Assembly: GCF_003918875.1 (NCBI RefSeq)
Contig: NW_025766414.1
Coordinates: 1,054,001-1,118,000, forward strand
Origin: Haliotis rubra
Lineage: Eukaryota
DNA length: 64,000 bases
Reading direction: 5' to 3'
Shown: piece after piece, positions 22,445 through 42,025 of the stretch
How the letters are laid out: each line of letters starts with the position of its first letter
How positions within the stretch are numbered: position 1 is the first letter of the stretch
Notes under the pieces: generated by a model
What the model saw: the letters and a program-made list of their open reading frames with translations, nothing else
Database searches by the model: none
Told to the model about the DNA's origin: nothing
Position numbers and translations under genes: made by a program

Positions 22445-23172
22445 ATTATGATATAGGTATGTGTGTATAAACTGTTGTATTCAAAACTAGCCGTGATATA
22501 TCCATGAATAAATTATTCTACAGTATTTAACTTTCCCCATGATATATCAGTGTGTATACATCGTTGTACTTAAATCTAGTCATGATATATCATGAATATA
22601 TTCTGTAGTACTTAACTCTTGCCATGTTATACCTGTGTGTGTATATTGTTGTATTTAAACCTAGCCATAATATATCATGAAGATATTCAGTATTACATAA
22701 CTCTTGCTATGATATACCTCTGTGTGTGTGTGTGTGTGTGTGTATTGTTGTATTTAAATCTTGCCATGTTATATCATGAAGATATTCAGTATTACTTAAC
22801 TCTTGCTATGATATACCTGTGTGTGTGTGTATTGTTGTATTTAAATCTTGCCATGTTATATCATGAAGATATTCAGTATTACGTAACTCTTGCTATGATA
22901 TACCTGTGTGTGTGTATTGTTGTATTTAAATCTTGCCATGATATATCATGAAGATATTCAGTATTACGTAACTCTTGCCATGATATACCCGTGTGTGTGT
23001 GTATATTGTTGTATTTAAACCTAGCCATGATATATCATGAAGATATTCAGTATTACGTAACTCTTGCCATGATATACCTGTGTGTGTGTATATATATATT
23101 GTTGTATTCAAATCAAGCCATGATATATCATGAAGATATTCAGTATTACTTAAATCTAGCCATGCTATACCT
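22445..23172. repeat. ~85-98-bp tandem repeat with embedded variable (TG)n, about 8 copies
   Basis: TATTGTTGTATTTAAATCTTGCCATGATATATCATGAAGATATTCAGTATTACGTAACTCTTGCTATGATATACC(TG)n; internally a dimer of related halves. Confidence 0.92.
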
Positions 23173-23699
23173 GTGAACATAGTTTGCAGTATTGAACTGA
23201 CACTCTGATATACCAACATATCTACAGTGATGTAGTCTTTCCCCTCCCGACATAGCTCTCCATGTACCCAGTCCCAGGCTTGCACGGCTCAGACAATCGA
23301 TATATGTTGTCGAGCACCACGTATGCCATGGCGGAGGATGACGACATTCGTTCCCATAGCGATCGGGGTACTGAATTATTCACGGATGTAAGGTATAAGA
23401 AGCTTATATCTGGCTTTGTTCAGCGTAACGCCTTATCAAGGCGAATTCAGCAACAGCCTAGATACTCAATGCATCCTAATAACTGCTTGGGGGATTTCGA
23501 ATTATCTTCTTCAATGAGAAAATATGTGTGGGTTTCGATGTCATTACATTCTATTCTCTGGCGCGTGCACCCGGAGAAACATCATTATAATTTCTTTACA
23601 TATAATGAGATCTAAGAAATGAATTAACCATTAAATATGGCCGCATAATGACCACTATGCATTGTTCAAATTTGTCACATTTTGACACCCAACATCAGA

Positions 23700-25759: not shown

Positions 25760-26947
25760 TTACATGTAACTCTTTTCACCAACATCAACCTTCCAAATGA
25801 ACATATTGAATGGGCCCGTGGCACTAAAGTCCATTGTATTTCCCAGGAACCGAGGCACGTCATTTACTGTAAACCAGAGATGACCACTGGTGTCCATAGC
25901 AAAGCTGTCAACCCATTTCATGCGCATATCATCCTTTACCACCTGAGTCTGTGTTTTCAGGGTAACATCATCAACAGACGCCGCCATTGCTATGTCCTTA
26001 GTGAAATCCCATTTGTACACAGCATTCGAATTCAGCGCTCCATAATACAAACTTTTACTTCCAGCTATCATGCCTCCGGTCTGGGAAACTTTGTTTCCAA
26101 GGTTTTTGACAGATCTGCTGATGTCGGCATTTTCATTCGCAAGCACTGACGTGGGAACACGGTAAAGTTTAAATGTGGACAAGGGGCAGTAGTAAAGATA
26201 CCTGTGGTCGGGGGAGAGGGCAATGCCATTTATCGGTGTATGTGACACAAATTTGGTGTGGTCAAAATCGATTGTAGTAGCTGAGCCCTGCTCGGCTGCC
26301 ATGCTCTTGTCTGAAAATGTGTACGATTTGTCCTTTCTGAAATCATAGACAACAAGTTTGGATGTTCCAGTATCGCTGATGTAGGCATAAGCAGGCTTTC
26401 CTGAAATTTTATGAATCACGATATCGTTCAGGTACGTCCTCATCTTTGGAGCGACGGCTTCGGGAAAAGTATGAACTCGGATAACCTTCTTGGCGTTTAT
26501 ATCGTAGATCACCAACTTGGCAGGACACAAGAACTGCCCCGGGTCGGCGATTATGTGTAAACCAGTGTCAATAATCCACATCCATCCAGATACAGGGTCA
26601 ATTTCAAAGCTCTGGGCGAACTGGATGGCTGAACAGTCCCCCACTTTCTGCATGTCCCAGCTGGGGAAGGGTTTGAGGATGGCCTCCCCATCTTTCTGTA
26701 CTACTACATTAACAGTAGATGGAACGCCCTTTTTAGTACGAGGAATCGTCAAGTACACGCTGTCTTTGTAAATCTTTATGCCTGAGATGAGGTTATTTTT
26801 TATGATGAAGCTTCCGTTTTTTATGGATGCCTGTTTCAGTGAATTGCTTGGCCAATCAAAGTCTATAGCGCGCCATTTATACTCTATGGCGGAATCTGCA
26901 AACCTGCTGCCGAGAACGGCGACCAGGAGGACTGTACATGCCAACAT
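25760..26947 (-). CDS. Yellow/MRJP-family secreted protein, copy A1 (395 aa, intronless)
   Basis: Signal peptide MLACTVLLVAVLG. Family motifs W..IDFDWP, ISGIKIY, TIPR..KGVPST, LKPFPSWDMQ..GDCSAIQ...EIDP..GWMWIIDTG, CPAKLVIYD, LNDIVI, AYISD, GIALSPD, WVDSF. The true ATG is at 26947 (the ORF track starts at an upstream TTG). Confidence 0.93.
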   Translation of the reverse strand: MLACTVLLVAVLGSRFADSAIEYKWRAIDFDWPSNSLKQASIKNGSFIIKNNLISGIKIYKDSVYLTIPRTKKGVPSTVNVVVQKDGEAILKPFPSWDMQKVGDCSAIQFAQSFEIDPVSGWMWIIDTGLHIIADPGQFLCPAKLVIYDINAKKVIRVHTFPEAVAPKMRTYLNDIVIHKISGKPAYAYISDTGTSKLVVYDFRKDKSYTFSDKSMAAEQGSATTIDFDHTKFVSHTPINGIALSPDHRYLYYCPLSTFKLYRVPTSVLANENADISRSVKNLGNKVSQTGGMIAGSKSLYYGALNSNAVYKWDFTKDIAMAASVDDVTLKTQTQVVKDDMRMKWVDSFAMDTSGHLWFTVNDVPRFLGNTMDFSATGPFNMFIWKVDVGEKSYM

Positions 26948-26992
26948 GGTCAAGTCGTATGCTGGACTGTCTCAGTTTGTCACAGTCGGAAG

Positions 26993-27000
26993 CTATATAG
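26993..27000 (-). promoter_or_regulatory. TATA-like box of yellow A1
   Basis: CTATATAG about 47 bp upstream of the ATG. Confidence 0.5.
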
Positions 27001-29308
27001 CTGTCGTTGGTGCCATCTGCTGTGCATCCATGTGTTATCTATTAGTTATGCAATGACACAAGCACTTTTCGTTACAATTGTCGACATTTTCTCCAAGCCC
27101 TTAAAATGTCTCAAGCTCAGAATTGTAAAGTCATCCAGATAAAATTATGTAGCAAAAAATTTATAATGAATACCAACCTTCACAGGTTAAAATTGTCACA
27201 GAGGATGGGCATAACTTTTTAAAACAAGTTAAGTAGTCACGCAAAGTGCTTATTTTGAAAACCCTAAATCAAAGGTGATTTTGAAGCACAGGACCTTATC
27301 CTACCACCAACGCTTATGGGTATCGATATACCATCCGACCTGTGGCAGTGACGTCAGAGTACAGACATATACGCAGTTTCATTTAACAATGCGCTAAATC
27401 TGCATGACAATGACGTGATTTCCATAATGTTTTTCACTCACTGTGGAACATATGTCATTACATTGTAAAATCTAGATCACTTGATAGTATATAGTCTGTA
27501 AATTAATTTATGATGAAAGTCAAGTCACTTTGCATCGGAATCATTTTTCAAATGTACAAAAAGGAAGATCTAGCTGATCTGTTTTTTAAACATACGAGTA
27601 AGAGTATCTCCTTTCACACCAGGGCATAAATTTCTACAGAGTCAGGAAACTTGATACGCCGCTGTCTACAACGTCGGAATGAAAATAAAGGGCATGTTGG
27701 AGATGAGAGACACAGAAATACTACGGGCAACCTTATGTGTAGCATTAGGGTGTAACAGTAAGTGTAATTTCTTCAGATTTTCAGCGAAACAAATACCGTT
27801 TTCCAAGGAGGCAAGATGGGTTACTGCAACATCAGCGAGGAGTCATTGGATGGAATCCGATGGGAGGTCCCGTTTTGTTTCTTGCATTTTGAGGCATAGG
27901 ACTATGAGAGAGATCCCGACCAACTCCGAACTTGGAAACGAAGGTATGTTCCCTTTGATATTATTCCAGTGTAAATCATTACATTTGGCACAGCGCATGA
28001 TTTACGTGCTTTCATTTGTTCATGTGTCTGATTTTGGAAGAAAAGCCTTGCTTATAATATTAAAAAACAAGCAGGATGAACCTTTCTGCAGTCACTAGAT
28101 TTAGGAAAACTCCTGTATGTACTGTATATAACTTCGGATATCATATTAATTTCTTTGAATGTAAACAATAACACGCCACCTGTGGATCATCACTGAATGA
28201 TTATTTAATTCATATTCTGTCTACATGTTGGATACATGAAACAATCTGGTAGATTTGACAAGTGTGAAAATGGTGTAGAGAAATATTATAAGTAATAAGT
28301 ATCATAGTATAAAGTACTTTTGAGTGTAATGTTTATACGTTTCATTTCATCAGAATCTTTTATATTGTATTTTGTTTCGTACTAAAATATGGTAGGACAT
28401 ACCGTTATTTGTCAGTGTAATTTATTGTTTAGAAAATCTGCAATTAAATTACTGCACTTTGTTTCTGCTCTTTACTTCAAAACATTCAGTTTTCACAAGA
28501 ATTAGTTTTGAGAAATGAATTGCTACCTCACATAAGCAGTGGTGTGGACGTTGAAATATTGTTATGCAGTTTTAGTCAAGTGACATCCTGAATCTTCTTT
28601 ATAAATTAAAGCTATAGACCGATGTCGTAAATCGTCTTAAACAAGGTTTTGAACCCCCGATCATGGATTTACTAGCGTCCTCAATGAACATTGCACTGTA
28701 AATTTGGCCACCTCAGGCGACTGTGCAACATTGCCCCTCCTCAGTTTAGGAAGTGATGTCCGCCGCAATATAGTTGGAATATTGGGAGTGCGGCGTAAAA
28801 CTAAACGCACTCACTACTGGTGATGTCACCAGTTAAAACCTTTCAGCAGCTTTTCACAGAAAGCCCCTTGCAAATGCTTTTTAAAGTGTTTTTCAACAGA
28901 GTTCCTGCTCTTCACAGGTTGATGTGAGAGGAAAGTGATATAGGTCTTAGGCGTTAATGACACCCGTGAACACGGGAACAGTGTTGAAAAACCTAGAAAA
29001 AGTCGAGGTGAAACAGGAATTGAGACCATGATCACGATCTGCACTGCCAATTCTAGCGCCTTAGACGACTGAACCACCTGTAATCATCAGTATTGCATTA
29101 TCCACACTAACTACTCTTCAAAAGGATGCATCGTTTTTTCGTTTATAATATTGTTTTTATTAACATATATGCAACAGGTACATAACAGTGAGAAGGGATG
29201 GAAAAAGTACAGCATACAAAGCGGAGATATGTGAAAAAGAAGTATGGCCTGAATTGCAAAACTGTTTTCATGGTATAATGACAGCTTGGTGTCAGGTTGA
29301 TGTCGAAG

Positions 29309-30499
29309 TTACAAATAATTCTTTTCACCAACATAAATCTTCCAAATGAACATATTAGACGGGGACGTGGCATTAACAAAATCCATTGTATTCTGAAGAA
29401 AATTTGGAAGTTTATTTACTGTAAACCAGAGGTAGCCATTAGTATCGAAAGCAAAGCTGTCAACCCATTCCATGTACGTGTCATCCTTTGCTACCTGGGT
29501 CTGCGTTTTCAGGGTAACATCGTCAACAGACGCCGCCATTGCCATGTCCTTGGTGAAATCCCATTTGTACACAGCATTCAAACTCAACGCTCCGTAATAC
29601 AAACTTTTACTTCCAGCTATCATGCCTCCGGTCTGGGAAACTTTGTTTCCAAGGTTTTTGACAGATCTGCTGATGTCGGCATTTTCATTCGCAAGCACTG
29701 ACGTGGGAACTCGGTAAAGTTTCACTGATGCCAAGGAACAGTAGTAAAGATACCGGAAGTCAGGTGAAAGAGCAATGCCATCTATCGGTATGTGTGTCGT
29801 AAATTGTGTGTGGTCAAAATTGATGATAGTCGCCGGACCCTGCTCGTCTAACATGCTCTTGTGTGAAAATGTGTACGATTTGTCCTTTCTGAAATCATAG
29901 ACAACAAGCTTAGCTGTTCCAGCATCCGTAATGTAGGCATAAGCAGGCTTTCCTGAAACTTTATGAATCACGATATCGTTCAGGAACGTGCGCATCTTTG
30001 GAGCGATGGCTTCAGGAAAATGATGAACTCGGATAACTTTGTCGGTGTTTATATCGTAGATAACAAGCTTAGGGGGACACAAGTATTGTCCCGGGTCGGC
30101 GATTGAGTTTAAACCAGTGTCAATAATCCACATCCATCCAGTTGCAGGGTCAATCTCAAGACTCTGAGAATACTGAATGGCTGAACAGTCCCCTTGTGTC
30201 TGCATGTCCCAGCTGGGGAAGGGTTTGAGGATTGCCTCCCCATGTTTCTCCACTACGACATTAAGAGTAGATGGAACGCCTTTCCTCCAACGAGGAATCG
30301 TCACGTACACACTGCCATTATAAATCTTTATGCCTGAGATGAGGTTATTTTGTATGATGAAGCTTCCGTTATTTATTAATTCCTGTCTGACTGAGGTGTT
30401 TGGCCAATCAAAGTCCAAGGCATGCCATTTGTACACGATGGCGGAATCCACAAAAACTTTTCCGAGAATGGCAATCAGAAGGATTGTAAATGTTAACAT
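29309..30499 (-). CDS. Yellow/MRJP-family secreted protein, copy A2 (396 aa, intronless)
   Basis: Close paralog of A1. Signal peptide MLTFTILLIAILG; TIPRWRKGVPSTL, GDCSAIQ, GWMWIIDTG, CPPKLVIYD, PIDGIALSPD. ATG at 30499. Confidence 0.93.
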   Translation of the reverse strand: MLTFTILLIAILGKVFVDSAIVYKWHALDFDWPNTSVRQELINNGSFIIQNNLISGIKIYNGSVYVTIPRWRKGVPSTLNVVVEKHGEAILKPFPSWDMQTQGDCSAIQYSQSLEIDPATGWMWIIDTGLNSIADPGQYLCPPKLVIYDINTDKVIRVHHFPEAIAPKMRTFLNDIVIHKVSGKPAYAYITDAGTAKLVVYDFRKDKSYTFSHKSMLDEQGPATIINFDHTQFTTHIPIDGIALSPDFRYLYYCSLASVKLYRVPTSVLANENADISRSVKNLGNKVSQTGGMIAGSKSLYYGALSLNAVYKWDFTKDMAMAASVDDVTLKTQTQVAKDDTYMEWVDSFAFDTNGYLWFTVNKLPNFLQNTMDFVNATSPSNMFIWKIYVGEKNYL

Positions 30500-31793
30500 G
30501 GTCACAGTCGTAAGCTAGTGAATCTGGGTTAGACACAGTCTTGAGCTAGAGAGTTTGCTGTCTTATCTGTAAGTTGTTCAATAATATGCTGACACACACT
30601 TTTCAGTACCATTGTCGAAACATTGCTTTATCTCTAAGAGCATGAGAATTAACATTATGTTGCCTCTAGTTTAAATGCTATAGTCATCGTGATAAGATTG
30701 TGTATCTATTCAAAATACAGAAAAAACAATATGAAATTGAGACCGAGACAGGTGAGAATTGAGGATTGGCAAAACGTTCACAAAGTTTAATTCCGCTGAC
30801 AATAAAACAAACAAAATTCCGATGTTAACTGGTTCTCGGGTTCAATTCCTAATTACCCATTACTTTAGATGGTTTGTCTGAACCATATGTGTAGATTCAA
30901 ACAAAGTGATAAATGTCTACGACCTTCGTCATTTGGGGAATCCTCCCAAACAAAGCTGACACAACCTAATGTAAACTGGGAAGACCCCGCAAACAAAGCT
31001 GACACAAGCTAATGTGAATTGGAAAGAATCCTTAAGCCAAACTCGCTATAAAGAAAGAGAAAAACAACTAAAAGAGATTGTTACCCTCGTCGTTGTATGA
31101 CCTTCCACAATAATCCAAACCAATTTTGTCAGTTCTCTCATAAACAATTAAACCGTTAATTGTACACACAGTATACTCCTCAGAACATTTATGTATGATA
31201 ACGTCAAATGCTACCTCTGATACAGTCAGTGAGGAGGAGAACCAGGGGTGTTATATGAGCTGGCGGAGGTTGCACGAGATATTGACATTGTGCTAGGTCA
31301 TTGATACTTATGTTATTTCTCGACTGTATGCCAGAATTTTCAAAATGATCGCACATATTAACCTGAGGCGAACTCATCAGCACTGGAAAATGAATCCATT
31401 TTTGCCATGTCTACATCTCTGAATAAACTTTTTGCGTTTATATTTGCTTTTGAAGTACTACTTGGGGTTCAGTTAATCCTGATATTAAGTTAAATTGAGG
31501 TTTGACATTTTCATTTATTAACGATAATATACTGATACCATGAAAAATAGGGGGTGTTCCGATACTTTTTTCCATGAGTATATCGATGTAGAAAAAATCA
31601 ATTTCATTCTTCGTTCACATTCTTCGTTCTATTTTAGTATACAAACGTTCAACGGGGACACTATTTTAATGTAACATGACGTATAAATTGACAAATTGAG
31701 CAACACAAATAATGACAGAAAGGAGTCCGCCAAAGCCGGTTTTATTACAATGATGTATGTATTGCTACATCCACATGTATACAATACAAAGAT

Positions 31794-33002
31794 TCACTTG
31801 GTTCCAAGGTAACCATTTTCGCCCAAATACAGTTTCCATACAAACATGTTAGGGCTGGAGATGTTCATCTTTTCAATTAAGAAGCTTCCTGCATTATCAG
31901 CTGTGAACCAGAGTGAACCTTCATTGTCGAAAGCTAAGGTGTCCACCCATTTCATCCGCTGATCATCATGAGCAACAAGAACCTGAGTGGTCAAAGTTAT
32001 GTCATCCGGTCCGGCTGCCATGTTTTGGTCCTTCATGAAATCCCACTGGTACACACCGTTTGAACTAAGAGCACCGTAATACATAAATTTCTTCCCAAAT
32101 GCTATACCATCAGACTGAGATTTCTTCACTCCGACCTTACGAACAGATTGCTTGAATAACCCCTTCGGATTGGAGAGAATGGTTGTAGGTATTCGGTACA
32201 AGCTAGTACCTGCTAGAGATGAGTAATACACGTACCTGAAGTCTGGCGACATGGCAATACCATTTATTGGGAATGTCTCTGGGTAGGATCTGTTGCCGAT
32301 ATGAACAACAGAAGATGGTGGAGATTCTGCTAACATGCTGCTGTCAGCAAAAGTGAACGATTTGTCAGACCGGAAGTCGTAGGTCACTATATGTGCTGGT
32401 CCACTATCACTGATGTACGCAAGGACAGCTTTACCACCCACTCTGTGGAGGACGATGTCATTCAGGAAGGAAGACCTGGATGCAACATGATCAGGGAAAA
32501 CATGGGTTCTGACTATACGTTTACGGTTGATGTCGTAGATGATGAGTTTAGGAGGGCAGATTGTCTCAGTGGGATCAGCCATTAATCCAATTCCTGTATC
32601 TATGATCCACATCCATCCCGTCAAGGGGTCGATCTCCATGCTCTGGGAGAACTGGATGGCGGAGCAGTCCCCAATAGTCTGCATCGACCAGCTGGGGAAG
32701 GGTCTAAGTATTGCCTTCCCGTCTTTCTCAATGATGACATTCAGCGTTGATGCAACACCTTTCTTCAGTCTAGGAACTGTGATGTACACGCTTCCATTGT
32801 ATACCTTGATCCCGCTGGCCATGTTACTTTCGGGAACGAAGCTGCCATTCTTGATAAACTCCTGTTTAATGCTGTCACTCGGCCATTCAAAGTCTAATGA
32901 TTTCCATTGATACTCCAGAGACAACTGTCCAACTTTTTGACTGATAGTGGTTACAAGGCACAGACCAAGGATTACCAAGCTGAACATTGTACACGTAGAC
33001 AT
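31794..33002 (-). CDS. Yellow/MRJP-family secreted protein, copy B1 (402 aa, intronless)
   Basis: Signal peptide MFSLVILGLCLVTTIS and the same family motifs; AATAAA 48 nt after the stop (31741-31746). Confidence 0.93.
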   Translation of the reverse strand: MSTCTMFSLVILGLCLVTTISQKVGQLSLEYQWKSLDFEWPSDSIKQEFIKNGSFVPESNMASGIKVYNGSVYITVPRLKKGVASTLNVIIEKDGKAILRPFPSWSMQTIGDCSAIQFSQSMEIDPLTGWMWIIDTGIGLMADPTETICPPKLIIYDINRKRIVRTHVFPDHVASRSSFLNDIVLHRVGGKAVLAYISDSGPAHIVTYDFRSDKSFTFADSSMLAESPPSSVVHIGNRSYPETFPINGIAMSPDFRYVYYSSLAGTSLYRIPTTILSNPKGLFKQSVRKVGVKKSQSDGIAFGKKFMYYGALSSNGVYQWDFMKDQNMAAGPDDITLTTQVLVAHDDQRMKWVDTLAFDNEGSLWFTADNAGSFLIEKMNISSPNMFVWKLYLGENGYLGTK

Positions 33003-33544
33003 TGTCTATGAAACCGTTGTCAGGTCCTGCATTTTAATGCTGTGATAAATCACACTAAATGTGTCATGACTTGGCATGTTCCCAATGTATTATATCTCTT
33101 TTAGGCATTAACTGTTAAAGTTCCGTTTAGGAGTACATGGGTGAGTTTGGTTTCACACTATTTCAGTTTTATCATGGTGTGAAGTGATAAGGTCTCTGAC
33201 GTTTAACACATCGGTTAAACAGATAAGCTTGTGTGTTGTCTGATACACATAAAAACACCGTCGATACAAAGTGAGTTTTGAACTCGAGATCACAGGTTAA
33301 CTGGCCTGCCCAAAGAACCATGTTTATGCATTGTGAAGTGTGGTGCCTTAGGCGAGGGGGCAATCAGTGCCCCTTTCTCCTCGTAGAAACTGATGTCACA
33401 AGCTCAACTGTATCAACAGCTTTTAATATAATTTCTCATGCTTTTCAAATCAACCAAAATGGGTGAGAGAGTTTGGAGTTCTCCATTTTGTACGTATTCC
33501 AGAAACATCAACTAGTGTCAACTTTATGTGAAGGAAAGCTTGAA

Positions 33545-34208
33545 GTAGTGCATGTGTTATGCTGTCGACAGTTTGGTGGTGGAAGCGTTATGGTATGTTG
33601 AAGCATCGCATCTCGTGGTTGGACACAACTTGTCATTGTCAATGGCAATCTGACAGTTCTGCGATACAGGGATGATATCACTAGGCCTCGTGTAGTTGTT
33701 CATTCAAGGACAGGGACGTAACTTCACGCTTCAGCAAGATAATGCCCGTCCACATGTCGCTCGTGTTGTGACAGATTACCTGAGACAGCAGAATAAACCC
33801 GTACGGCCCTGGTCAGCAGTTTCCCTGGACCTATCCCTTATCGAGCACACTTGGGATGAAATGGAGAAACGTTTACGTCAAGCCCAGAATCAGCCATTGA
33901 CGTTAGCTGAATTGGGACAAGCGTTAGTTCACATACATGGAACATTCCCCAAGATTTCTTCAATCACTTAGTGTCGTCAATGCGTCGTCATTGCAAGCTT
34001 GCATCAACGACACCGGTTGACATAAACGATATTGAATTTATGAACTGACCTTTGACACCACACCTCTTCAAGGGCGTGAAACGATGCCTAGTGTCAAACC
34101 ATACAGATTTCGACATTATCCTGTCCACAGTTAAACAATGGTTAAGGAAAACGCCATAACATGGCTAAGCATCAAATAATGCACAGTTACTTTATTCCAG
34201 TAGTTTAT
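33545..34208 (+). mobile_element. Tc1-family element, 3' half (degraded DDE domain)
   Basis: FGGGSVMV...LVIVNGNLT..RYRD / FTLQQDNARPHVARVVTDYL...WSAVSLDLSLIEHTWDEM (DNA.PH and SPDL.PIE motifs). Confidence 0.88.
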
Positions 34209-34401
34209 ATAGTCCACTTGAATATGATAGTTTCATGCAATTTTAGTATAGAAACGTTCAGGTGGGAAGGTATATGACTGTAATATCACTTATATGATGA
34301 CAAATTGAGCTAAAGAAATAATGACAGAAAGGAGTCCGTCAAAGCTACTTTTATTGCAATGAGTATGCACTGCTACATCCACAGGTATACAATACCAAGT
34401 T

Positions 34402-35595
34402 TCATTTGATTCCCAGATACCCATTTTCGCCCAAATACAGTTTCCATATGAACATGTTAGTTCTGGAGATGTTCATCTTTTCAATTAAGAAGCTTCCTGC
34501 ATTATTAGCTGTGAACCAGAGTGAACCTTTGTTGTCGAAAGCTAAGGAGTCCACCCATTTCATCCGCTGGTCATCATGAGCAACAAGAACCTGAGTGGTC
34601 AAAGTTATGTCATCCGGTCCAGCCGCCATGTTTTGGTCCTTCATGAAATCCCACTGGTACACACCATTTGAACTAAGAGCACCGTAATACATAAATTTCT
34701 TCCCAAATGCCATACCATCAGACTGAGATTTCTTCACTCCGACCTTACGAACAGATTGCCTGAATAACCCCTTCGGATTGGAGAGAATGGTTGTAGGTAT
34801 TCGGTACAAGCTAGTACCTGCTACAGGAGAGTAATACACGTACCTGAAGTCTGGCGACATGGCAATACCATTTATTGGGATTGTTTCTGGGTAGGACTTA
34901 TTACCGATATGAACAACAGAAGATGGTGGAGATTCTGCTAACATACTGCGGTCAGCGAAACTGAACGATTTGTCAGACCGGAAGTCGTAAGCCACTATAT
35001 GTGCTCGTCTACTATCACTGATGTACGCAAGGACAGCTTTACCACCCACTCTGTGGAGGACGATGTCGTTCAGGAGGGAAGATCTGGATGCAACATGATC
35101 AGGGAAAAGATGGGTTCGGACTATTCGTCTATGATTGATGTCGTAGATGATGAGTTTAGGAGGGCAGATCGTCTCTGAAAAGTCAGCGATTAGTCCAATT
35201 CCTGTGTCAATGATCCACATCCATCCCGTCAAGGGGTCGATCTCCATGCTATGAGAGTACTGGATGGCGTGACAGTCCCCAATAGTCTGCATCGACCAGC
35301 TGGGGAAGGGTCTGAGGATTGCCTTCCTGTGTTTGTGAATGATGACATTCAGCGTTGATGGAACACCTTTCTTGAGTCTTGGAACTGTGACGTACAGGCG
35401 TCCATGGTACGCCTTGATCCGGCTGGGGATGTTACTTTCGGGAATGAAGCTGCCATTCTTGATAAACTCCTGTTTAACCCTGTGGCTGGGCCATTCAAAG
35501 TCTAATGATTTCCATTGATACACCAGTGACAAGTGTCCAACGTTTCGACTGTAAACGTTTACAAGGCACAGACCAAGGATTACCAAGCTGACCAT
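34402..35595 (-). CDS. Yellow/MRJP-family secreted protein, copy B2 (397 aa, intronless, His/Arg-enriched)
   Basis: Paralog of B1/B3. The first ATG is lost (TTG plus a small insertion), so it starts at the second Met, MVSLVILGLCLVNVYS; ORF intact. Confidence 0.92.
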   Translation of the reverse strand: MVSLVILGLCLVNVYSRNVGHLSLVYQWKSLDFEWPSHRVKQEFIKNGSFIPESNIPSRIKAYHGRLYVTVPRLKKGVPSTLNVIIHKHRKAILRPFPSWSMQTIGDCHAIQYSHSMEIDPLTGWMWIIDTGIGLIADFSETICPPKLIIYDINHRRIVRTHLFPDHVASRSSLLNDIVLHRVGGKAVLAYISDSRRAHIVAYDFRSDKSFSFADRSMLAESPPSSVVHIGNKSYPETIPINGIAMSPDFRYVYYSPVAGTSLYRIPTTILSNPKGLFRQSVRKVGVKKSQSDGMAFGKKFMYYGALSSNGVYQWDFMKDQNMAAGPDDITLTTQVLVAHDDQRMKWVDSLAFDNKGSLWFTANNAGSFLIEKMNISRTNMFIWKLYLGENGYLGIK

Positions 35596-35984
35596 TGTAC
35601 ATGTAGGCAGGGACAGACAATGTCTATGAAGCCGTTATCAGCTCCTGTGTTGTAACAGATCACGGGAAACGTGTCATCTCTTGATATGTTTAGGCATTGA
35701 CTGTTAAATTTCCGTTTAGGAGTACATGGGTGAGTTTGGTTTCACACTATTTCAGTTTTATCATGGTGCGAAGTGATAAGGTCTCTAACGTTCACCACAT
35801 GGGTTAATCAGATGAGATCGATTGTGGTGCTGACCTCGAGATCACAGGTTAACTGGCCTGCCCAAGGAACCATATTTATGCACTGTGAAGTGTGGTGCCT
35901 GAGGCGAAGATAAAGATAAGACATGCATATTTGTAAGTTTTTAAAAAACCTGGTACGTGTCAGGTTCATGATAAATCCTTTATA

Positions 35985-37542
35985 TACTGAACCACAAAAG
36001 AAATGTCGCACCGATGGCAGTTTCTTAAAGCACACACTGTAACTCACTCTAATTAACAATCAAATGAATTGAATAAAAAACAAATTAAAAAAAAAACAAT
36101 CAAAACGAGAATTGAGTCCAAACTTGACAATTATGGTTACCACATTTTCGGGAATCACATTTAGAGTTCACACAAACAAAATGACCAAAAATGGTACCAT
36201 TAAGAGACCTCAAAGTCAGTATTGTGTGTGGCCTCTATGGGCATCGATGAAAGCGTTGCATCGTCTGTACATGGAATGAATTAGCCGGTTGATGAAGGCC
36301 ATAGGCACTTGGGTCCATACTCTGTGAAAAGCCTGATCGAGTCCAGCAGCAGTTGTCGGCCTTGGGTGGAGGTCATTCAGTCTTCTTTGAATCTCGTCCC
36401 AAAGGTGTTCTATTGGACTCAAATCAAGACTGAGTGGAGGCTATTGTAGGGTTTGGATGCCATGTTGTCTTAGGAAGTCCAATGTTACTCTGGCAGTGTG
36501 GGCACGAGCTTTGTCTTGCTGGAAGATGTGATTTCAGTAATGTCCAAAATGTGGTACAACGCGGGCTCTTATGACTTGGTCAATATAGCGAGCAGCTGTC
36601 ACGTCATTTCCTCATCCTGGACCGAGATTCTGGAACACTACAGTGTCAACTATCTGGTTCAGACCTATTGCATCCCACACCATGATGCTTGGGACCACCC
36701 CATGAGTCTCTTTCAACAATACTCTATTGGAAAACAGTTCCCCACTCCTTCACCATACTCTCACTCTGCCATCGACTGTCGAAACACAGTATCGGCTTTC
36801 ATGAGATAAAAGCACAGTTCTCCATTGTCGATAACGCAAATTTTGATGCTGAGTTGCCCATTGCAGTCGGTTTGGGCGATGATGAGCGGTGAGGACAGGA
36901 CTACGATATGGTCTGTGACAGCAGAGATTTCTTCCGCGCAAACGTCGATGCACTGTATCGGCATTGATGGGTCTGTTGTGAGTCCCAATGGTCTGGCGTG
37001 CTGTTTCCGTCTCTCTGGGGAAGCGATCCTGGAGATGGTGTCGGCCTTGACGTCGTGATGTTACTAAAGGTCGCCCACTGCGTGGACGGTCTTGGATGTT
37101 GTTAGTGACCTGATACCGCTCCTGCAGTCGGTAGACTGTCCTAGCATGAACATTAAAATGATTGGCTACCCTCCGTGCAGTCTGGCCAACTTGCAATCGT
37201 CCCAAGACTTGGTTCCTCTGATCTCTCGTAAGTCGTTCCATGGCGATTGTGTCAAAACAAAAACGATTTCAGGCGAGTTTGGGACTCGCTTTCATTGGTA
37301 GGGTTGTTACTATATGCACGTGCATTTTCATTTTCACGAATGTCATACGGAACCTTTTACCACGTCTGCCATTTTAGGTGCGCTTGTTCGATATGCTTTT
37401 TCATCGGAAAACACACTGATGTTGGTACTTTGAATTGAAAAACATGTAAATAAAACGATACAATCATGATAAAAACACCATTTTGTATGAACAAAATCTT
37501 GCATTTGGTTTTGAAATGCGACGTTTCTTTTGTGGTTCAGTA
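35985..37542 (-). mobile_element. Near full-length Tc1-family transposon (~1.56 kb), defective transposase
   Basis: 26-bp TIRs TACTGAACCACAAAAGAAA(T/C)GTCGCA with one mismatch, TA flanks. Transposase pieces MERLTRDQRNQVLGRLQ...DRPRSGRP (from 37241) and SPIEHLWDEIQRRL...GHTQY (to 36216), with frameshifts. Confidence 0.94.
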
Positions 37543-37695
37543 TATATAATTCATCAACATACATCCTCCGTGTAAAATTCTTATTCGGAAAAGTGGCTTT
37601 TACAAAATCTATGGTATTCTGAAGAACTCCAGGAAGTATATCTACTGTGAACCAGTGGTAGCCATATGTGTCAAATGCAAGTTGTTAACCCAGTT

Positions 37696-37902
37696 GGTTT
37701 ATACCGGGACTGTCGACAACAACATATAATCCGTCCAAATTACTTGTCGACAGTCCGGGGAAAGGGAAATGATGTTCTACATGAGTGACTTCACGCCCAG
37801 TGTTCTCGAAATTAACAAACCAATTAAGAACAGAGTGCGATATATATAGAAGACAATATATTTATTTACTCAATATAACAATATGTATGTATATGTCACA
37901 CA

Positions 37903-37986
<84 letters not shown>

Positions 37987-38440
37987 AAGTGATTTCTACA
38001 GGTGTATAAGCAATAAATATTTAAAAGATAAGTCCAGATATTTTTTCTTGCCAAAACTCCTTTATATCTGCACTAAAGTAATCTGTAATGTTCAGCCAAG
38101 ATGAAGCAACTCTGACACATGACACATATTTTGTAAGCTATGTTTCTTTCCGGTATTTTTTTTGGCATGTTAAACTTCAAAATGGTAATCCTTCCACTCG
38201 CATAACGTAAAATAATAGTCTGTTTGCAACCTTAATTCTCTTAGAAATTGTTAAAAAGACATTCTCTATAATTAACTGAATTCATTTACTCATGAAACCA
38301 TAGCCACCATAGCCACTTGCAAATCACTGAGCAAACATTCTCTTTCATTAATTAATTCCGTCACGGTATGTTGACCACGCGATGTCGACACTCCGGGGTT
38401 TTTTTCTGTCGACGGTTTGTCAACAGATCGGGCTGACATC
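37696..38440. mobile_element. 745-bp non-autonomous DNA element with internal (TG)n and 8-bp TSD
   Basis: TSD ACCCAGTT at 37688-37695 and 38441-38448; degenerate TIRs (about 15/24 matches); long (TG)n at ~37906-37983. Confidence 0.75.
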
Positions 38441-38817
38441 ACCCAGTTCCTGTACGTGTCATCATTTGCCACCAGAAGAGTAACATCGTCCACAGATGCT
38501 ACCATGCCTTTGTTTGTAGTCAGCATTCAAACCAAATGCTGCATATAAAAAGAATGTTTACTTCCATCCATCCTGTCTCCGGTCTGGGAAGGTTTGTTTC
38601 AGTTCTCTCGCCAATTTTTTCACAAGCTCTGGCCTGGGAACACAAAAAAAGTTTCATTGAAGCCAGAGAGCTGTAGTGAGGAAACTGGAGGTCAGGTGAA
38701 AGAACAATGTCATGTATCGGAGTATGTGTCTTAAATTGTGTGCGGTCATAACTGATGACAGTTGGGGTGGCGTGCTCATCTAATAAGATCCTGTCTGTAT
38801 GTGTGTACACTTTGTCC

Positions 38818-39056
38818 GTGATTACACAATGCCATTTAGAAAGTGGTCAAATGTAACATGTTATATTTGGGATTACACTGTCTTAGTGGAAGTCGCCATG
38901 GCTGAGCGGGTTAGGCGGCTGATTTTGTGTGCTGGCGATTAGGTGCTTAACTCTGGGGGTGTGGGTTCGAATCCCGCATGGGACTCGACCCAACAAAAGT
39001 ACTAGAAGCTTTACTTTACTAAGAAAGTGCAATCCCAAATATAAAATACGTTACAA
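38818..39056 (+). mobile_element. Insertion carrying a tRNA(Leu/Ser)-like Pol III cassette between ~36-bp inverted repeats
   Basis: TSD-like TTTGTCC (38811-38817, 39057-39063). IRs TGTAACATGTTATATTTGGGATTACACTGTCTTAGT / ACTAAGAAAGTGCAATCCCAAATATAAAATACGTTACA. A box TGGCTGAGCGG, B box GGTTCGAATCC. Confidence 0.75.
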
Positions 39057-39994
39057 TTTGTCCATTCTGAAATCAGAATAAACAAGTCTCGCTGTTCCTG
39101 CATCCGTAATGTAAGCATAAGCAGGCTTTCCTGAAACTTTATGAACCACTATGTCGTTCTGGTACGTATGCATCTGTGGAGTGATATGGAGCTTCATGAA
39201 AATAATGAAATGGGATAACCCTGTCTGTGTTTATATCATTTATTCCCAGCTTCAAGGTACACACGTACTGTCCCGGCGGGCGACTCAGTTGAAGTCAGTA
39301 TCAATAACAACTCATGAAGTTGAATTAAAAATTCTTGAGATTGCTGGTGCCGTTCAGGGATTGAAACAAATTTGCTACTCCATCTATTTGCCGGACAAGA
39401 GAGTCAAGAGATCATCCTCCGACTCTGCGAGCAAATGCTCTGTGCACGACACAAAGGAGGCAGTCTACCCTCCCTGACAGACCCAGGGCGGTAAGTGACG
39501 TTTTTTTTTTTATAAGAAATAGATGAGTTACATCCTTCATTTGCCGATTGTAAGATAGACACATTAAGCGGAAATGCTACTGCTGTAATATCACGTATGC
39601 AGTCCAGCACTGCTGTGTCGAAGTTCGAAGTAAAAGCTGTATCTTCCACATTTCAGCATGATTTTGTGGTTGTGTCAAAAATGGGACAACTTGGTGTATT
39701 TACACAGGTCTCTTCAACTTCGAGACAGGTTTTGACTGTTAGTGTGTCAACAAACTGAACTGCACAAATAATGATACAAATGACCCCCCCAAAGCTACTT
39801 TATTGCAATGATGTATGTATTACTACATCCACAATTTTACCAATTGCAGTATAGAAACGTTCAACTGGGAAGGCAATATCACGTATATAATGACAAACTG
39901 AGCTAAAGAAATAATGAGAGAAAGGAGTCCGTCAAAGCTAATTTTATTGCAATAAGTATGCACTGCTACATCCACAGGTATACAATACAAAGAT

Positions 39995-41203
39995 TCACTT
40001 GGTTCCCAGGTACCCATTGTCGCCCAAATACAGTTTCCATATGAACATGTTAGGTCTCGAGAAGTTCATCGTTTGACCCATGAAGCTTACCAGATCATTC
40101 ACTGTGAACCAGAGTGAACCTTCATTGTCGAAAGCTAAGGTGTCCACCCATTTCATTCGCTGGTCATCATGAGCAACAAGAACCTGAGTGGTCAAAGTTA
40201 TGTCATCCGGTCCGGCTGCCATGTTCTCATCATTCATGAAATCCCACTGGTACACGCCATTTGAACTAAGAGCACTGTAATACATGAACTGCTTCCCAAA
40301 TGCCATACCATCAGACTGAGACTTCTTCACTCCGACTTTTTTAACAGATTGCTTGAATAACGCCTTAGGATTGGAGAGAACGGTTGTAGGTATTCGGTAC
40401 AAGCTGGTACCTGCTACAGGAGAGTAATACACGTACCTGAAGTCTGGCGACATGGCAATACCATCTATCGGGGTTGTTTGTGGGTAGGACTTGTTGCCGA
40501 TATGAACAACAGAAGATGGTGGAGATTCTGCTAACATGCTGCTGTCAGCAAAACTGAACGATTTGTCAGACCGGAAGTCGTAGGTCACTATATGTGCCAG
40601 TCTACTATCACTGATGTACGCAAGGACAGCTTTACCACCCGATCTGTGGAGGACGATGTCATTCAGGAAGGAAGACCTGGATGCAACATGATCAGGGAAA
40701 AGATGGGTTCGGACTATTCGTCTATGATTGATGTCGTAGATGATGAGTTTAGGAGGGCAGATCGTCTCTGCGGAGTCAGCGATTACACCAATTCCTGTGT
40801 CTATGATCCACATCCATCCCGTCAAGGGGTCGATCTCCATGCTCTGGGAGTATTGGATGGCGGAGCAGTCCCCAATAGTCTGCATCGACCAGCTGGGGAA
40901 GGGTCGGAGGATTGGCTTTCCGTCTTTCTCAATGATGACATTCAGCGTTGATGCAACACCTTTCTTCCATCTGGGAACTGTGACGTACACGCTTCCATTG
41001 TACACCTTGATCCCGGTAATGATGTTATTTTCGAGAACGAAGCTGCCATTCTTGATAAACTCCTGTTTAATGCTGTCACTCGGCCATTCATACTCTATTG
41101 AATCCAATTGATACTCAAGTGTCAAGTGTCCAACGTTTTGACCGAAAGTGTCTACAAGGCACAGACCAAGGGTTACCAAGCTGAACATTGTGCGTACAGA
41201 CAT
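39995..41203 (-). CDS. Yellow/MRJP-family secreted protein, copy B3 (402 aa, intronless)
   Basis: ATG at 41203 (MSVRTMFSLVTLGLCLVDTFG; the ORF track starts at an upstream TTG). TVPRWKKG, GDCSAIQ, GWMWIIDTG, PIDGIAMSPD; 3' UTR shared with B1/B2. Confidence 0.93.
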   Translation of the reverse strand: MSVRTMFSLVTLGLCLVDTFGQNVGHLTLEYQLDSIEYEWPSDSIKQEFIKNGSFVLENNIITGIKVYNGSVYVTVPRWKKGVASTLNVIIEKDGKPILRPFPSWSMQTIGDCSAIQYSQSMEIDPLTGWMWIIDTGIGVIADSAETICPPKLIIYDINHRRIVRTHLFPDHVASRSSFLNDIVLHRSGGKAVLAYISDSRLAHIVTYDFRSDKSFSFADSSMLAESPPSSVVHIGNKSYPQTTPIDGIAMSPDFRYVYYSPVAGTSLYRIPTTVLSNPKALFKQSVKKVGVKKSQSDGMAFGKQFMYYSALSSNGVYQWDFMNDENMAAGPDDITLTTQVLVAHDDQRMKWVDTLAFDNEGSLWFTVNDLVSFMGQTMNFSRPNMFIWKLYLGDNGYLGTK

Positions 41204-41790
41204 TGCCACACAGTGACTTGCGTTTACGAAGCCGTTATCAGCTCGTGTGTTGTAGATCAATGATAGCTCACGGGAAACGTGGTATGTTTAGACATGTTTA
41301 CCAGAGTATTATATCTCATACGCCATTGTCTGGCTATTGACGTTAAGTTTAAATAATATCTCCGAAGAATTCAAGCTCATACTGACTGAGTTTGGTTTTA
41401 CGCCGCTTTTAGCAATAATCAAGCTCATAAACAATACCCTGTTATGATATATGCGATCTCAGACAGCACATGCAAGCAGTGGTATGCAAGATTTACCATG
41501 TTTAATTAAACACGTTTGTGAGCAGACACATATTGTATTCTTGGTACCAAACGCTCAACATGTCATCGTCAAAATCCAGCCACCACTCTCACTCATGAGT
41601 AGAACACCAGTCGAGATGGCGTTGGTCGATTGAGGAGCATGGCACGACGAATTCGTGAATGCCTTGTCAACAGAGGTGGTTTTACCTCACATGAGTAATG
41701 TTGGCCGCACAATTTGACTCCGTCCTCTTTAACTACCTAATGGGCCAGCATCCCCTCACACCAGTATAACCCACTCGATCAGTGATCGCC

Positions 41791-41859
41791 TTCCATCCAA
41801 CAGATATGGTGATAGCACATCAATAACTGATGTGCTGTTACCATATCTGTTGGATGGAA
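41791..41859. repeat. 69-nt inverted repeat (32-bp stem, 5-nt loop)
   Basis: TTCCATCCAACAGATATGGTGATAGCACATCA-ataac-TGATGTGCTGTTACCATATCTGTTGGATGGAA. Confidence 0.9.
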
Positions 41860-42025
41860 AGCGTTGCATCGTCTGTACATGGAATGAATTAGCCGGTTGA
41901 TGAAGGCCATAGGCACTTGGGTCCATACTCTGTGAAAAGCCTGATCGAGTCCAGCAGCAGTTGTCGGTCTTAGGTGGAGGTCATTCAGTCTTCTTTGAAT
42001 CTCGTCCCAAAGGTGTTCTATTGGA
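41857..42025 (-). mobile_element. Internal fragment of the same Tc1 family as 35985-37542
   Basis: Near-identical (about 2 differences) to 36249-36417. Confidence 0.9.

What the first reader, a model, noticed from the sequence alone, without database searches (positions are those of the whole stretch)
25760..41203. Tandem array of intronless secreted Yellow/MRJP genes in a probable mollusc genome
Seen: five intact head-to-tail ORFs (395-402 aa, signal peptides, GDC...CP cysteine pair, GWMWIIDTG) plus one pseudogene within 15.5 kb, in two subfamilies. Established: Yellow/MRJP six-bladed propellers are best characterised in insects (dopachrome conversion in melanin synthesis, royal jelly proteins, sand-fly amine-binding salivary proteins) and are patchily distributed elsewhere. 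Inference: a recent, actively turning-over expansion of secreted paralogs parallels the honeybee MRJP array. It could be an undescribed molluscan secretory system for shell/mantle or ink pigmentation, mucus defence or amine scavenging.
Basis: partly seen in the sequence, partly recalled or inferred. Interest (0 to 1): 0.88.

Follow-up and report, generated by a model that had tools for sequence, protein, structure and literature searches.

The report
Conserved abalone yellow/MRJP gene array
This stretch of the blacklip abalone genome carries five working, intron-free genes and one dead copy of the secreted "yellow / royal-jelly" propeller protein family; the array is real, but it is old, shared with other abalones, and of a kind already described in molluscs in 2019.

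Summary
Five intact minus-strand ORFs (395-402 aa) and one decayed copy lie at 25760-41203. All five hit Pfam MRJP (E 1e-33 to 1e-42). One copy (Y2) models as a confident six-bladed beta-propeller that best matches mosquito dopachrome-conversion enzyme and bee MRJP1.

The window is Haliotis rubra scaffold QXJH01000237.1, so "mollusc" is right.

- **Not recent:** H. asinina has the same B-psi-B-B-A-A array, and each H. rubra gene pairs 1:1 with its positional orthologue. The pseudogene and its 5' truncation are shared. Orthologue dN/dS is 0.07-0.25.
- **What is ongoing:** the three B genes exchange sequence by gene conversion, and transposons keep inserting into the dead copy.
- **Not undescribed:** Rosani et al. 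2019 (PMC6678240) reported intronless DCE/yellow genes across lophotrochozoans, clusters in H. discus hannai, and high H. rufescens expression in kidney and liver.
- **Function untested:** by profile alignment the pocket is conserved and polar. It lacks the sand-fly LJM11 aromatic cage and three pocket residues of the insect enzyme.

Two modest additions come from this work: a basic copy in each subfamily that is conserved across species, and the full array architecture. The scan had other notes on this same stretch but none on other DNA. Interest is low.

The parts
25760..26947 (-). Y1: subfamily A yellow/MRJP gene, 395 aa, basic (mature pI 8.9), single-exon coding region including the stop
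   Evidence: ORF. PF03022 E 7e-41. Orthologue in H. asinina at 93% aa identity, dN/dS 0.07. pI. AATAAA/ATTAAA-type signal 165 nt after the stop.
29309..30499 (-). Y2: subfamily A yellow/MRJP gene, 396 aa, near-neutral (pI 6.5)
   Evidence: PF03022 E 1e-41. 90% identical to H. asinina 'protein yellow-like'. AF2 pLDDT 94.7. Foldseek TM 0.80 to Aedes DCE and 0.81 to MRJP1. dN/dS 0.19.
31794..33002 (-). Y3: subfamily B gene, 402 aa from the first ATG, or 397 aa from the second ATG at 32987, which is the start annotated in the H. asinina orthologue
   Evidence: PF03022 E 8e-33. ATG positions. Orthologue pairing 95/93. dN/dS 0.21.
34402..35595 (-). Y4: subfamily B gene, 397 aa, strongly basic (pI 9.6). 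The upstream ATG used by Y3 reads TTG here.
   Evidence: PF03022 E 3e-33. 21 residues unique to Y4, 10 of them changes to H/R/K. The H. asinina orthologue is also basic, pI 9.0. Upstream sequence. dN/dS 0.25.
35986..37541 (-). About 1.55 kb of inserted DNA absent from H. asinina, holding a Tc1/mariner transposase remnant (ORF 36750-37241)
   Evidence: HTH_Tnp_Tc3_2 E 2e-9. The collinear alignment with H. asinina skips this block.
37550..39307 (-). Pseudogene of subfamily A type. It lacks about aa 1-124 and lies in pieces in three reading frames.
   Evidence: tblastn pieces 39294-39190, 39185-39057, 38816-38646, 38598-38440 and 37678-37550 in frames -2, -3, -3, -2 and -1. Nucleotide match to Y2 ends at 39307. 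A relic with the same 5' truncation sits in the same slot in H. asinina.
38818..39056 (.). 239-bp insertion with a tRNA-like core and inverted ends. It splits the pseudogene at about aa 206/207 and is absent from H. asinina.
   Evidence: Sequence read. The tblastn pieces abut it. H. asinina has 13 bp in its place. ARAGORN and Rfam call nothing here.
37696..38461 (.). About 767-bp insertion in the pseudogene containing a (TG/CA)39 microsatellite. It is absent from H. asinina.
   Evidence: Collinearity gap. Microsatellite at 37906-37983. Sequence.
39995..41203 (-). Y5: subfamily B gene, 402 aa (or 397 aa from the ATG at 41188), pI 6.0, first gene of the array in the direction of transcription
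   Evidence: PF03022 E 8e-34. Orthologue pairing 99/96. dN/dS 0.16. The bacterial-code ORF 39995-41260 starts at a TTG, and the first ATG is at 41203.

Best explanation
This is the complete yellow/MRJP (DCE/yellow) gene array of the blacklip abalone Haliotis rubra. It holds five functional single-exon genes and one old relic, ordered B-psiA-B-B-A-A in the direction of transcription. Each gene encodes a secreted protein of about 375 residues: a signal peptide followed by a six-bladed beta-propeller with one conserved disulphide pair.

Shown: the duplications happened within the lineage leading to Haliotis, after it separated from the other molluscs sampled but before the H. rubra / H. asinina split. 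Since then the array has been kept intact under purifying selection. The central and 3' parts of the three B genes are homogenised by gene conversion. Transposable elements accumulate in the dead copy and the spacers. Each subfamily contains one strongly basic member (Y1, Y4) alongside near-neutral members, and that split is conserved between species. By profile alignment, the residues at the LJM11 ligand-site positions are nearly the same in all copies.

Inferred: the copies share one biochemical activity but differ in surface charge, and so in partners or site of action. The most likely activity is binding or converting a small polar or aromatic metabolite in the central pocket. That pocket holds conserved Gln-Ser, Asp/Asn, Trp and Asp, which marks it as the ancestral non-insect type rather than the insect melanin-enzyme pocket. 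A dopachrome or o-quinone conversion is the leading single guess, at roughly one chance in three. The published tissue signal for an abalone paralogue points to kidney and digestive gland rather than the shell-forming mantle.
For: - **Family and fold:** PF03022 at 115-144 bits against a cut-off of 19.8. PDB sequence hits to MRJP1 (1e-31) and Aedes DCE (3e-23). AF2 pLDDT 94.7 and pTM 0.92. Foldseek TM 0.80-0.81 to DCE 9w1k and MRJP1 5yyl, 0.74 to LJM11, 0.67 to Ava_4197.
- **Species:** the contig is QXJH01000237.1 of GCA_003918875.1, which is the H. rubra reference (PMC9327721).
- **Conserved array:** H. asinina CM074530.1 carries the same five intron-free genes and the relic in the same order.
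- **1:1 orthology:** supports are 100/99, 90/86, 95/93, 97/95 and 99/96. Haliotis is monophyletic at 100/99 and 99 in the 82-protein tree, nested among molluscs, with arthropods in a separate clade.
- **Shared pseudogene:** the relic interval is collinear between the two species and the 5' truncation is shared.
- **Selection:** orthologue dN/dS is 0.07-0.25.
- **Gene conversion:** Y3 and Y4 are 97.2% identical over nt 736-1020 against 90.2% elsewhere (P = 4e-6). Segment trees group by orthology at nt 1-330 and by species at nt 376-600 and 736-1020.
- **Charge split:** mature pI is 8.9 / 9.2 / 8.7 for the Y1 group, 9.6 / 9.0 for the Y4 group, and 5.5-7.1 for the rest.
- **Pocket:** Q/H112, S113, D/N240, W345 and D347 are conserved in the five copies and in most of 82 relatives.
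- **Literature:** intronless DCE/yellow genes, Haliotis clusters, and H. rufescens kidney/liver expression above 100 TPM (PMC6678240).
Against: - No expression, protein or activity data exist for these H. rubra genes. The exact-sequence look-up found them only on genome contigs.
- No signal-peptide predictor was available, so secretion rests on sequence features and family precedent.
- Pocket positions were mapped through a profile alignment to LJM11 and DCE, not through a structural superposition.
- The catalytic residues of the insect enzyme are not known to me from any paper in the library, so conversion activity can be neither supported nor excluded.
- It is not known which of the five genes corresponds to the H. 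rufescens gene that is highly expressed in kidney and liver.
- 5' UTR introns cannot be excluded without transcripts.
Confidence: 0.78

Rival explanations
1. This is a recent, actively turning-over, species-level expansion comparable to the honeybee MRJP array, and it forms a previously undescribed molluscan secretory system for shell or ink pigmentation, mucus defence or amine scavenging.
For: It is a tandem array with a pseudogene. The expansion is specific to the Haliotis lineage among the molluscs sampled. H. cracherodii has an extra tandem A copy and a dispersed copy on another scaffold. Gene conversion is ongoing. A Cepaea Yellow-like transcript is weakly higher in pigmented mantle (PMC7016172).
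Against: All five genes and the pseudogene have positional orthologues in H. asinina, with orthologue dS of 0.25-0.44. dN/dS is 0.07-0.25. Molluscan intronless yellow genes and Haliotis clusters were published in 2019. The highly expressed H. rufescens gene is expressed in kidney and liver, not mantle. Cepaea Yellow-like is about three-fold higher in foot than in mantle, and its authors doubt a melanin role.
Confidence: 0.08
2. The proteins are biogenic-amine binders that sequester serotonin and similar amines in the central pocket, working like the sand-fly salivary protein LJM11.
For: Same fold, TM 0.74 to 3q6k. They are secreted. The aromatic equivalent of LJM11 Phe-325 is a conserved Trp.
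Against: Of the seven LJM11 serotonin-site residues listed in PMC6678240, only that one aromatic is kept. Tyr-90/Gln-91 align with Gln(His)-Ser, Phe-178 with Ala/Thr/Ser, Phe-223 with Asp/Asn, Asp-328 with Ser/Thr, and Phe-344 with Leu/Val/Ala. LJM11 is the most distant of the three animal structures by sequence (E 2e-7).
Confidence: 0.08
3. The intron-free genes are a recent horizontal acquisition from bacteria or protists, or recent retrocopies of an intron-bearing parent gene.
For: The coding regions have no introns. The family is patchily distributed, and horizontal transfer has been proposed for its deep history (PMC6678240). Some database relatives carry the prokaryote-style name 'sugar lactone lactonase YvrE'.
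Against: The Haliotis clade nests among mollusc sequences, and the nearest relatives are chiton, scallop and other gastropod genes at 43-48% identity. Chiton and scallop genes are also intron-free and in tandem. An intronless gene is traced through most lophotrochozoan genomes. The A copies share homology only from about 45 bp upstream of the ATG to the stop, with no poly(A) tail remnant, and the B copies share 170-350 bp of flank, as expected for DNA-level tandem duplication.
Confidence: 0.04
4. The array is an assembly artefact produced by uncollapsed haplotypes or a mis-join.
For: The H. rubra assembly is scaffold-level. Its gene annotation fuses part of the array into one 832-aa product, which is a gene-model error, not an assembly one.
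Against: The copies differ by 13-50% at the protein level. The window has no N gaps. The same gene order is found in the independent chromosome-level H. asinina assembly and, for the part fetched, in H. cracherodii.
Confidence: 0.01

Closest known systems
Molluscan intronless DCE/yellow genes and the Haliotis discus hannai cluster (Rosani et al. 2019, Genes 10:495, PMC6678240)
   Same: Same family, same genus, intron-free coding regions, tandem clustering, and a signal peptide followed by a single MRJP domain. Their supplement lists six genes in H. discus hannai, including an intronless cluster of three and a single copy beside a rho-GTPase gene. That single copy matches the dispersed H. cracherodii copy beside a RhoGAP gene.
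   Different: That study used fragmented assemblies and saw a cluster of three. Here the full B-psiA-B-B-A-A architecture is resolved. It is shown to be conserved 1:1 between H. rubra and H. asinina, with a shared relic, gene-conversion tracts, and paralogues whose charge difference is conserved. Rosani et al. read same-species clustering as possibly recent duplication. The orthologue comparison shows the duplications are older than the species split, and that part of the within-species similarity comes from gene conversion.
Insect dopachrome-conversion enzymes (Drosophila yellow-f/f2, Aedes aegypti DCE, PDB 9w1k)
   Same: Same Pfam family and same six-bladed propeller (TM 0.80, 24-25% identity). 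Both are secreted. The motifs around the PR-x-x-G-(V/I)-PSTLNVV, W-x-x-DTG and Y-I-(S/T)-D segments align well.
   Different: Not orthologous: arthropod sequences form a separate clade. At pocket positions where the Aedes enzyme has Tyr-Arg, Phe and Asp, the abalone proteins have Gln-Ser, Asp/Asn and Ser/Thr, with the conserved Asp one residue earlier. Activity is untested.
Honeybee MRJP array (MRJP1, PDB 5yyl/7asd)
   Same: A tandem array of secreted yellow-family paralogues. MRJP1 is the best sequence match among solved structures (E 1e-31 single sequence, 6e-70 profile). Both cysteines of the pair are conserved.
   Different: From general knowledge, bee MRJPs are a young lineage-specific expansion nested within a cluster of yellow genes, they contain introns, and they carry C-terminal repeat regions suited to a nutritional role. 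The abalone genes are intron-free and have no repeat tail. They are also old relative to the species split and under ordinary purifying selection.
Sand-fly salivary yellow-related protein LJM11 (PDB 3q6k)
   Same: Same fold (TM 0.74) and a secreted single-domain protein.
   Different: Only one of its seven amine-binding residues is conserved.
Bacterial MRJP-like protein Ava_4197 (PDB 2qe8, 'putative hydrolase')
   Same: Same family by sequence (E 3.5e-9 single sequence, 3e-26 profile) and by fold (TM 0.67). The W-x-D motif is conserved.
   Different: It lacks the N-terminal region of about 90 residues found in the animal proteins (the alignment starts at profile position 94). Its function is equally unknown.

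Membership tests
Yellow/MRJP family (Pfam PF03022) | Significant match to the MRJP profile above the curated cut-off | tested here: met
   All five proteins score 114.5-143.7 bits against a cut-off of 19.8, E 1e-33 to 1e-42, covering profile positions of about 10-277 of 288.
Yellow/MRJP family (Pfam PF03022) | Six-bladed beta-propeller fold | tested here: met
   AF2 model of Y2 has pLDDT 94.7 and pTM 0.92 and is all-beta after residue 19. Foldseek top hits are Aedes DCE, MRJP1, LJM11 and Ava_4197 at TM 0.67-0.81. Only Y2 was modelled.
Yellow/MRJP family (Pfam PF03022) | N-terminal secretion signal and the conserved cysteine pair | tested here: met
   Hydrophobic N-termini, modelled in Y2 as a separate low-confidence helix at residues 2-13. 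The GDC and CP(P/A)KL cysteines align with the DCS and CSPKL cysteines of MRJP1. No dedicated signal-peptide predictor was available.
Insect dopachrome-conversion enzymes (yellow-f/f2, Aedes DCE) | Orthology with the insect enzyme clade | tested here: not met
   The Haliotis clade (99) lies among mollusc sequences, and arthropod sequences form their own clade (99). Published trees also separate non-insect from most insect yellows. No yellow-f/f2 or Aedes DCE sequence was in this tree.
Insect dopachrome-conversion enzymes (yellow-f/f2, Aedes DCE) | Same pocket residues as the solved Aedes enzyme | tested here: not met
   By profile alignment, DCE Tyr-Arg, Phe and Asp correspond to Gln-Ser, Asp/Asn and Ser/Thr in the abalone proteins. 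Which DCE residues are catalytic is not known to me.
Insect dopachrome-conversion enzymes (yellow-f/f2, Aedes DCE) | Conversion of dopachrome to dihydroxyindole | not testable with these tools
   Needs a recombinant enzyme assay.
LJM11-type amine-binding salivary proteins | Aromatic cage plus the Gln/Asp pair that bind serotonin | tested here: not met
   One of seven positions is conserved, Trp for Phe-325 (residue list from PMC6678240; mapping).
Lophotrochozoan intronless DCE/yellow lineage (Rosani et al. 2019) | Single-exon coding region, a signal peptide plus one MRJP domain, and placement among mollusc sequences | tested here: met
   Uninterrupted ORFs. Intron-free tandem relatives in chiton and scallop. 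Tree placement.
Young lineage-specific expansion of the honeybee MRJP kind | Duplications younger than the split between closely related species, with copy sets differing between species | tested here: not met
   1:1 positional orthologues and a shared pseudogene in H. asinina. Only H. cracherodii shows extra copies.

The most novel reading that the evidence does not exclude
The five abalone proteins may carry out the still-unknown ancestral activity of the non-insect yellow family. This reading rests on a polar Gln-Ser / Asp-Asn / Trp / Asp pocket that is shared with protist, collembolan and other mollusc relatives and differs from the insect melanin enzyme. The conserved split into basic and near-neutral isoforms would then direct one chemistry to different extracellular partners or compartments, for example metabolite or dietary-phenolic processing in kidney and digestive gland rather than pigmentation. 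If so, the abalone array would be a tractable system for finding out what yellow proteins did before insects recruited them for melanin.
Probability: 0.2. Interest if true: 0.5.

Novelty: already known. Interest (0 to 1): 0.2.

Why it matters
It matters little as a discovery. The family, its presence in molluscs, its intron-free state and its clustering in abalone are all published, and the genes are already annotated in public abalone genomes.

What this check adds is a correction and some detail:
- The array is an old, stable five-gene unit with a shared relic. It is not a young birth-and-death cluster.
- Part of the within-species similarity that earlier work read as possibly recent duplication comes from gene conversion.
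- Each subfamily keeps a basic and a near-neutral isoform across species.

The biochemical role of non-insect yellow proteins remains an open question, and abalone would be a reasonable place to test it.

Tried and rejected
- **Flanking genes:** the ten longest flanking ORFs (90-144 aa) were scanned against Pfam to find neighbouring genes. Nothing usable came back, so the flanks stay uncharacterised apart from satellites.
- **RNA genes:** ARAGORN and Rfam on the whole window found no tRNA and no RNA family, not even in the tRNA-like insertion.
- **Transcript evidence:** an exact-sequence look-up found Y1-Y3 only on genome contigs. Y4 and Y5 were not found at all. A likely reason is that the H. 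rubra annotation fuses part of the array into one 832-aa product.
- **DCE structure paper:** a literature search for the paper behind the 2025 Aedes DCE structure, to obtain catalytic residues, found none.
- **Abalone-specific literature:** searches for abalone work on yellow or MRJP proteins found only Rosani et al. 2019. One Cepaea study was also relevant.
- **Pocket mapping:** the model's coordinates are not exposed to scripts, so pocket residues could only be mapped by profile alignment.
- **Readings considered and rejected:** haplotype artefact, recent horizontal transfer or retrocopy origin, and an LJM11-type amine binder. See the rival explanations.
- **Weak Pfam hits:** the SGL (SMP-30/gluconolactonase) hits for Y1 and Y4 are below that family's cut-off (19.0 and 17.8 against 26.3 bits). 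They reflect the shared propeller fold only.

Full report
**1. Observation**

The region 25760-41203 holds five long minus-strand ORFs.
- With eukaryotic ATG starts they run 26947-25760 (Y1, 395 aa), 30499-29309 (Y2, 396 aa), 33002-31794 (Y3, 402 aa), 35595-34402 (Y4, 397 aa) and 41203-39995 (Y5, 402 aa).
- They are five of only six ORFs of at least 150 aa in the 64 kb window.
- Every copy contains GWMWIIDTG, GDC and CP(P/A)KL.
- Y1 and Y2 are 78.5% identical (subfamily A). Y3, Y4 and Y5 are 83-87% identical (subfamily B). A against B is about 52%.
- A sixth, decayed copy of A type lies at 37550-39307. It covers only about aa 124-392 and lies in three reading frames.
- The window has no N runs.

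**2. Family and fold**

- All five proteins match Pfam MRJP (PF03022) at 115-144 bits against a cut-off of 19.8.
- Among solved structures, Y2 matches bee MRJP1 (E 1e-31), Aedes aegypti dopachrome-conversion enzyme (3e-23), a cyanobacterial MRJP-like protein (3.5e-9) and sand-fly LJM11 (2e-7).
- An AlphaFold2 model of Y2, built on an 82-sequence alignment, has mean pLDDT 94.7 and pTM 0.92. It shows a lower-confidence N-terminal helix at residues 2-13, followed by an all-beta domain.
- Foldseek against the PDB ranks Aedes DCE (TM 0.80), MRJP1 (0.81), LJM11 (0.74) and Ava_4197 (0.67) first. Unrelated propellers follow far behind.
- Each gene has an AATAAA/ATTAAA-type signal 47-165 nt after its stop.

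**3. Organism**

The window's own proteins map to contig QXJH01000237.1 of GCA_003918875.1. QXJH00000000 is the Haliotis rubra reference genome (PMC9327721). The best database hits are 'protein yellow-like' and 'major royal jelly protein-like' of H. asinina (90%) and H. cracherodii (84%). Chiton, whelk, scallop and pulmonate proteins follow at 43-48%. 'Probable mollusc' is correct.

**4. Age of the array**

- H. asinina chromosome CM074530.1 carries five intron-free MRJP genes in the same order and orientation (three B, then two A). A decayed A-type relic sits between the first and second B gene.
- In a maximum-likelihood tree each H. rubra gene pairs with its positional H. asinina counterpart. 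Supports are 100/99, 90/86, 95/93, 97/95 and 99/96, and all Haliotis copies form one clade (100/99).
- The interval holding the relic is collinear between the two species, including the non-coding DNA upstream of the truncated 5' end. The gene was therefore already dead and truncated in their common ancestor.
- Later events are lineage-specific. On the H. rubra side these are a 239-bp tRNA-like element (38818-39056), a 767-bp insert with a TG microsatellite, and 1.55 kb containing a Tc1/mariner remnant. On the H. asinina side it is a 4.3-kb insert.
- H. cracherodii shows real turnover, with a second tandem A copy and a dispersed A copy on another scaffold beside a RhoGAP gene.
- Orthologue dN/dS is 0.07-0.25, so all five copies are under constraint.

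'Recent, actively turning-over' does not describe this locus.

**5. Gene conversion**

Synonymous divergence among the three H. rubra B paralogues (0.17-0.19) is lower than between orthologues (0.25-0.29). That conflicts with simple orthology.
- A sliding window shows mosaicism.
- Y3 and Y4 differ at 8 of 285 sites over nt 736-1020 against 89 of 906 elsewhere (P = 4e-6).
- Segment trees group the genes by orthology at nt 1-330 and by species at nt 376-600 and 736-1020, in both species.

The B genes are therefore partly homogenised by gene conversion. This makes paralogues look younger than they are.

**6. Differences between copies**

- The mature proteins of the Y1 group are basic in all three species (pI 8.9, 9.2, 8.7). 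The Y4 group is basic in both species sampled (9.6, 9.0). All other copies lie at pI 5.5-7.1.
- Y4 has 21 residues unique among B copies, and 10 of them are changes to His, Arg or Lys.
- Subfamily A keeps a third cysteine (Cys254) that B lacks.
- Residues at the positions aligned with the LJM11 ligand site hardly differ between A and B.

**7. Function**

The serotonin-binding residues of LJM11 are listed in PMC6678240. I mapped them through a profile alignment.

| LJM11 | Abalone proteins |
|---|---|
| Tyr-90 / Gln-91 | Gln(His)112 - Ser113 |
| Phe-178 | Ala/Thr/Ser193 |
| Phe-223 | Asp/Asn240 |
| Phe-325 | Trp345 |
| Asp-328 | Ser/Thr348, with a nearly invariant Asp347 one residue earlier |
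| Phe-344 | Leu/Val/Ala364 |

- Only the Trp is retained. Aedes DCE has Tyr-Arg, Phe and Asp at three of these positions.
- The abalone residues are conserved across most of the 82 aligned relatives: Gln in 60, Ser in 70, Asp or Asn in 81, Trp in 72 and Asp in 79.
- The pocket is therefore a conserved polar one, typical of the non-insect branch. It is neither the LJM11 amine cage nor a copy of the insect enzyme's pocket.
- Published expression shows one H. rufescens paralogue above 100 TPM in kidney and liver.
- A Cepaea Yellow-like transcript is about three-fold higher in foot than in mantle, and its authors doubt a melanin role (PMC7016172).

I infer a secreted small-molecule-binding or small-molecule-converting propeller. 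Dopachrome or o-quinone conversion is the leading guess, at about one chance in three. Nothing here tests activity.

**8. Origin of the intron-free state**

In an 82-protein tree the Haliotis clade (99) sits among mollusc sequences. Arthropods form a separate clade (99), and protist sequences lie across the midpoint root. Chiton (three head-to-tail genes) and scallop relatives are also intron-free and clustered, while a whelk relative has introns. Rosani et al. traced an intronless gene through most lophotrochozoan genomes. The intron-free state is therefore old, and nothing points to recent transfer or retroposition.

**9. Prior knowledge**

Rosani et al. 2019 (PMC6678240) reported the following:
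- DCE/yellow genes in molluscs;
- the intronless gene;
- clusters in H. discus hannai, M. yessoensis and Lingula;
- six genes in H. discus hannai, including an intronless cluster of three and a single copy beside a rho-GTPase gene;
- diversification in Haliotis species;
- tissue expression in H. rufescens.

NCBI annotates the orthologues. The kind of thing is already known. This check adds the full conserved architecture, the shared relic, the gene conversion and the conserved charge split.

**10. Verdict**

The family and phylum assignments are confirmed. The claims of recency and of being undescribed are not supported, and function is untested. Novelty: already known. Interest: low.

Noticed in passing
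window 5511-10636: A satellite of about 5 kb with a 58-bp unit (116-bp higher-order period, about 43 copies). One strand is strongly C-rich (GC 0.53, GC skew -0.56).
   Followed up: no
window 17525-18436; 52354-53185; 54495-54844; 22460-23175: Four further minisatellites: 29-bp x 31 copies, 32-bp x 26, 23/46-bp x 15, and an array of about 85-89 bp. The flanks of the array are repeat-rich, and no long ORF there has a Pfam match.
   Followed up: partly
window 38818-39056: A 239-bp element with inverted ends and a tRNA-like T-arm motif (GGTTCGAATCC on the plus strand) is inserted in the pseudogene. It is absent from the orthologous H. asinina site, so it was mobile after the species split. ARAGORN and Rfam do not call it.
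   Followed up: partly
window 36249-36417 and 41857-42025; 41787-41863: A 169-bp segment is repeated at 98.8% identity on either side of Y5, next to a 77-bp palindromic stretch. It is probably a young MITE-like element.
   Followed up: no
window 36750-37241 (-): A 163-aa ORF with Tc3-type transposase HTH domains. It is a Tc1/mariner remnant lying in 1.55 kb that H. asinina lacks.
   Followed up: partly
L004 1-2546 (H. rubra annotation, covering window Y4 and upstream): The public H. rubra gene call yields an 832-aa MRJP product that runs off the locus. It probably fuses Y5 and Y4 across the pseudogene. This may be why the exact Y4 and Y5 proteins are missing from the protein collection.
   Followed up: partly
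L006 10001-11191 (H. cracherodii JAJLRC010000009.1): A dispersed intron-free A-type copy on a different scaffold, next to a RhoGAP gene. It matches the single H. discus hannai copy flanked by a rho-GTPase gene in Rosani's supplement. Whether H. rubra has it was not checked.
   Followed up: partly
window 31691-31775, 34300-34383, 39750-39833, 39893-39976: An 85-bp motif is repeated in the 3' flanks of all three B genes and occurs twice after Y5. It carries AATAAA-type poly(A) signals in the two copies after Y5, the only ones read.
   Followed up: no
L007 10001-19350 (Liolophura sinensis) and L008 (Pecten maximus): A chiton has three head-to-tail intron-free MRJP genes. A scallop has at least three clustered ones, two of them confirmed intron-free. 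Tandem intron-free yellow arrays therefore recur across mollusc classes.
   Followed up: partly
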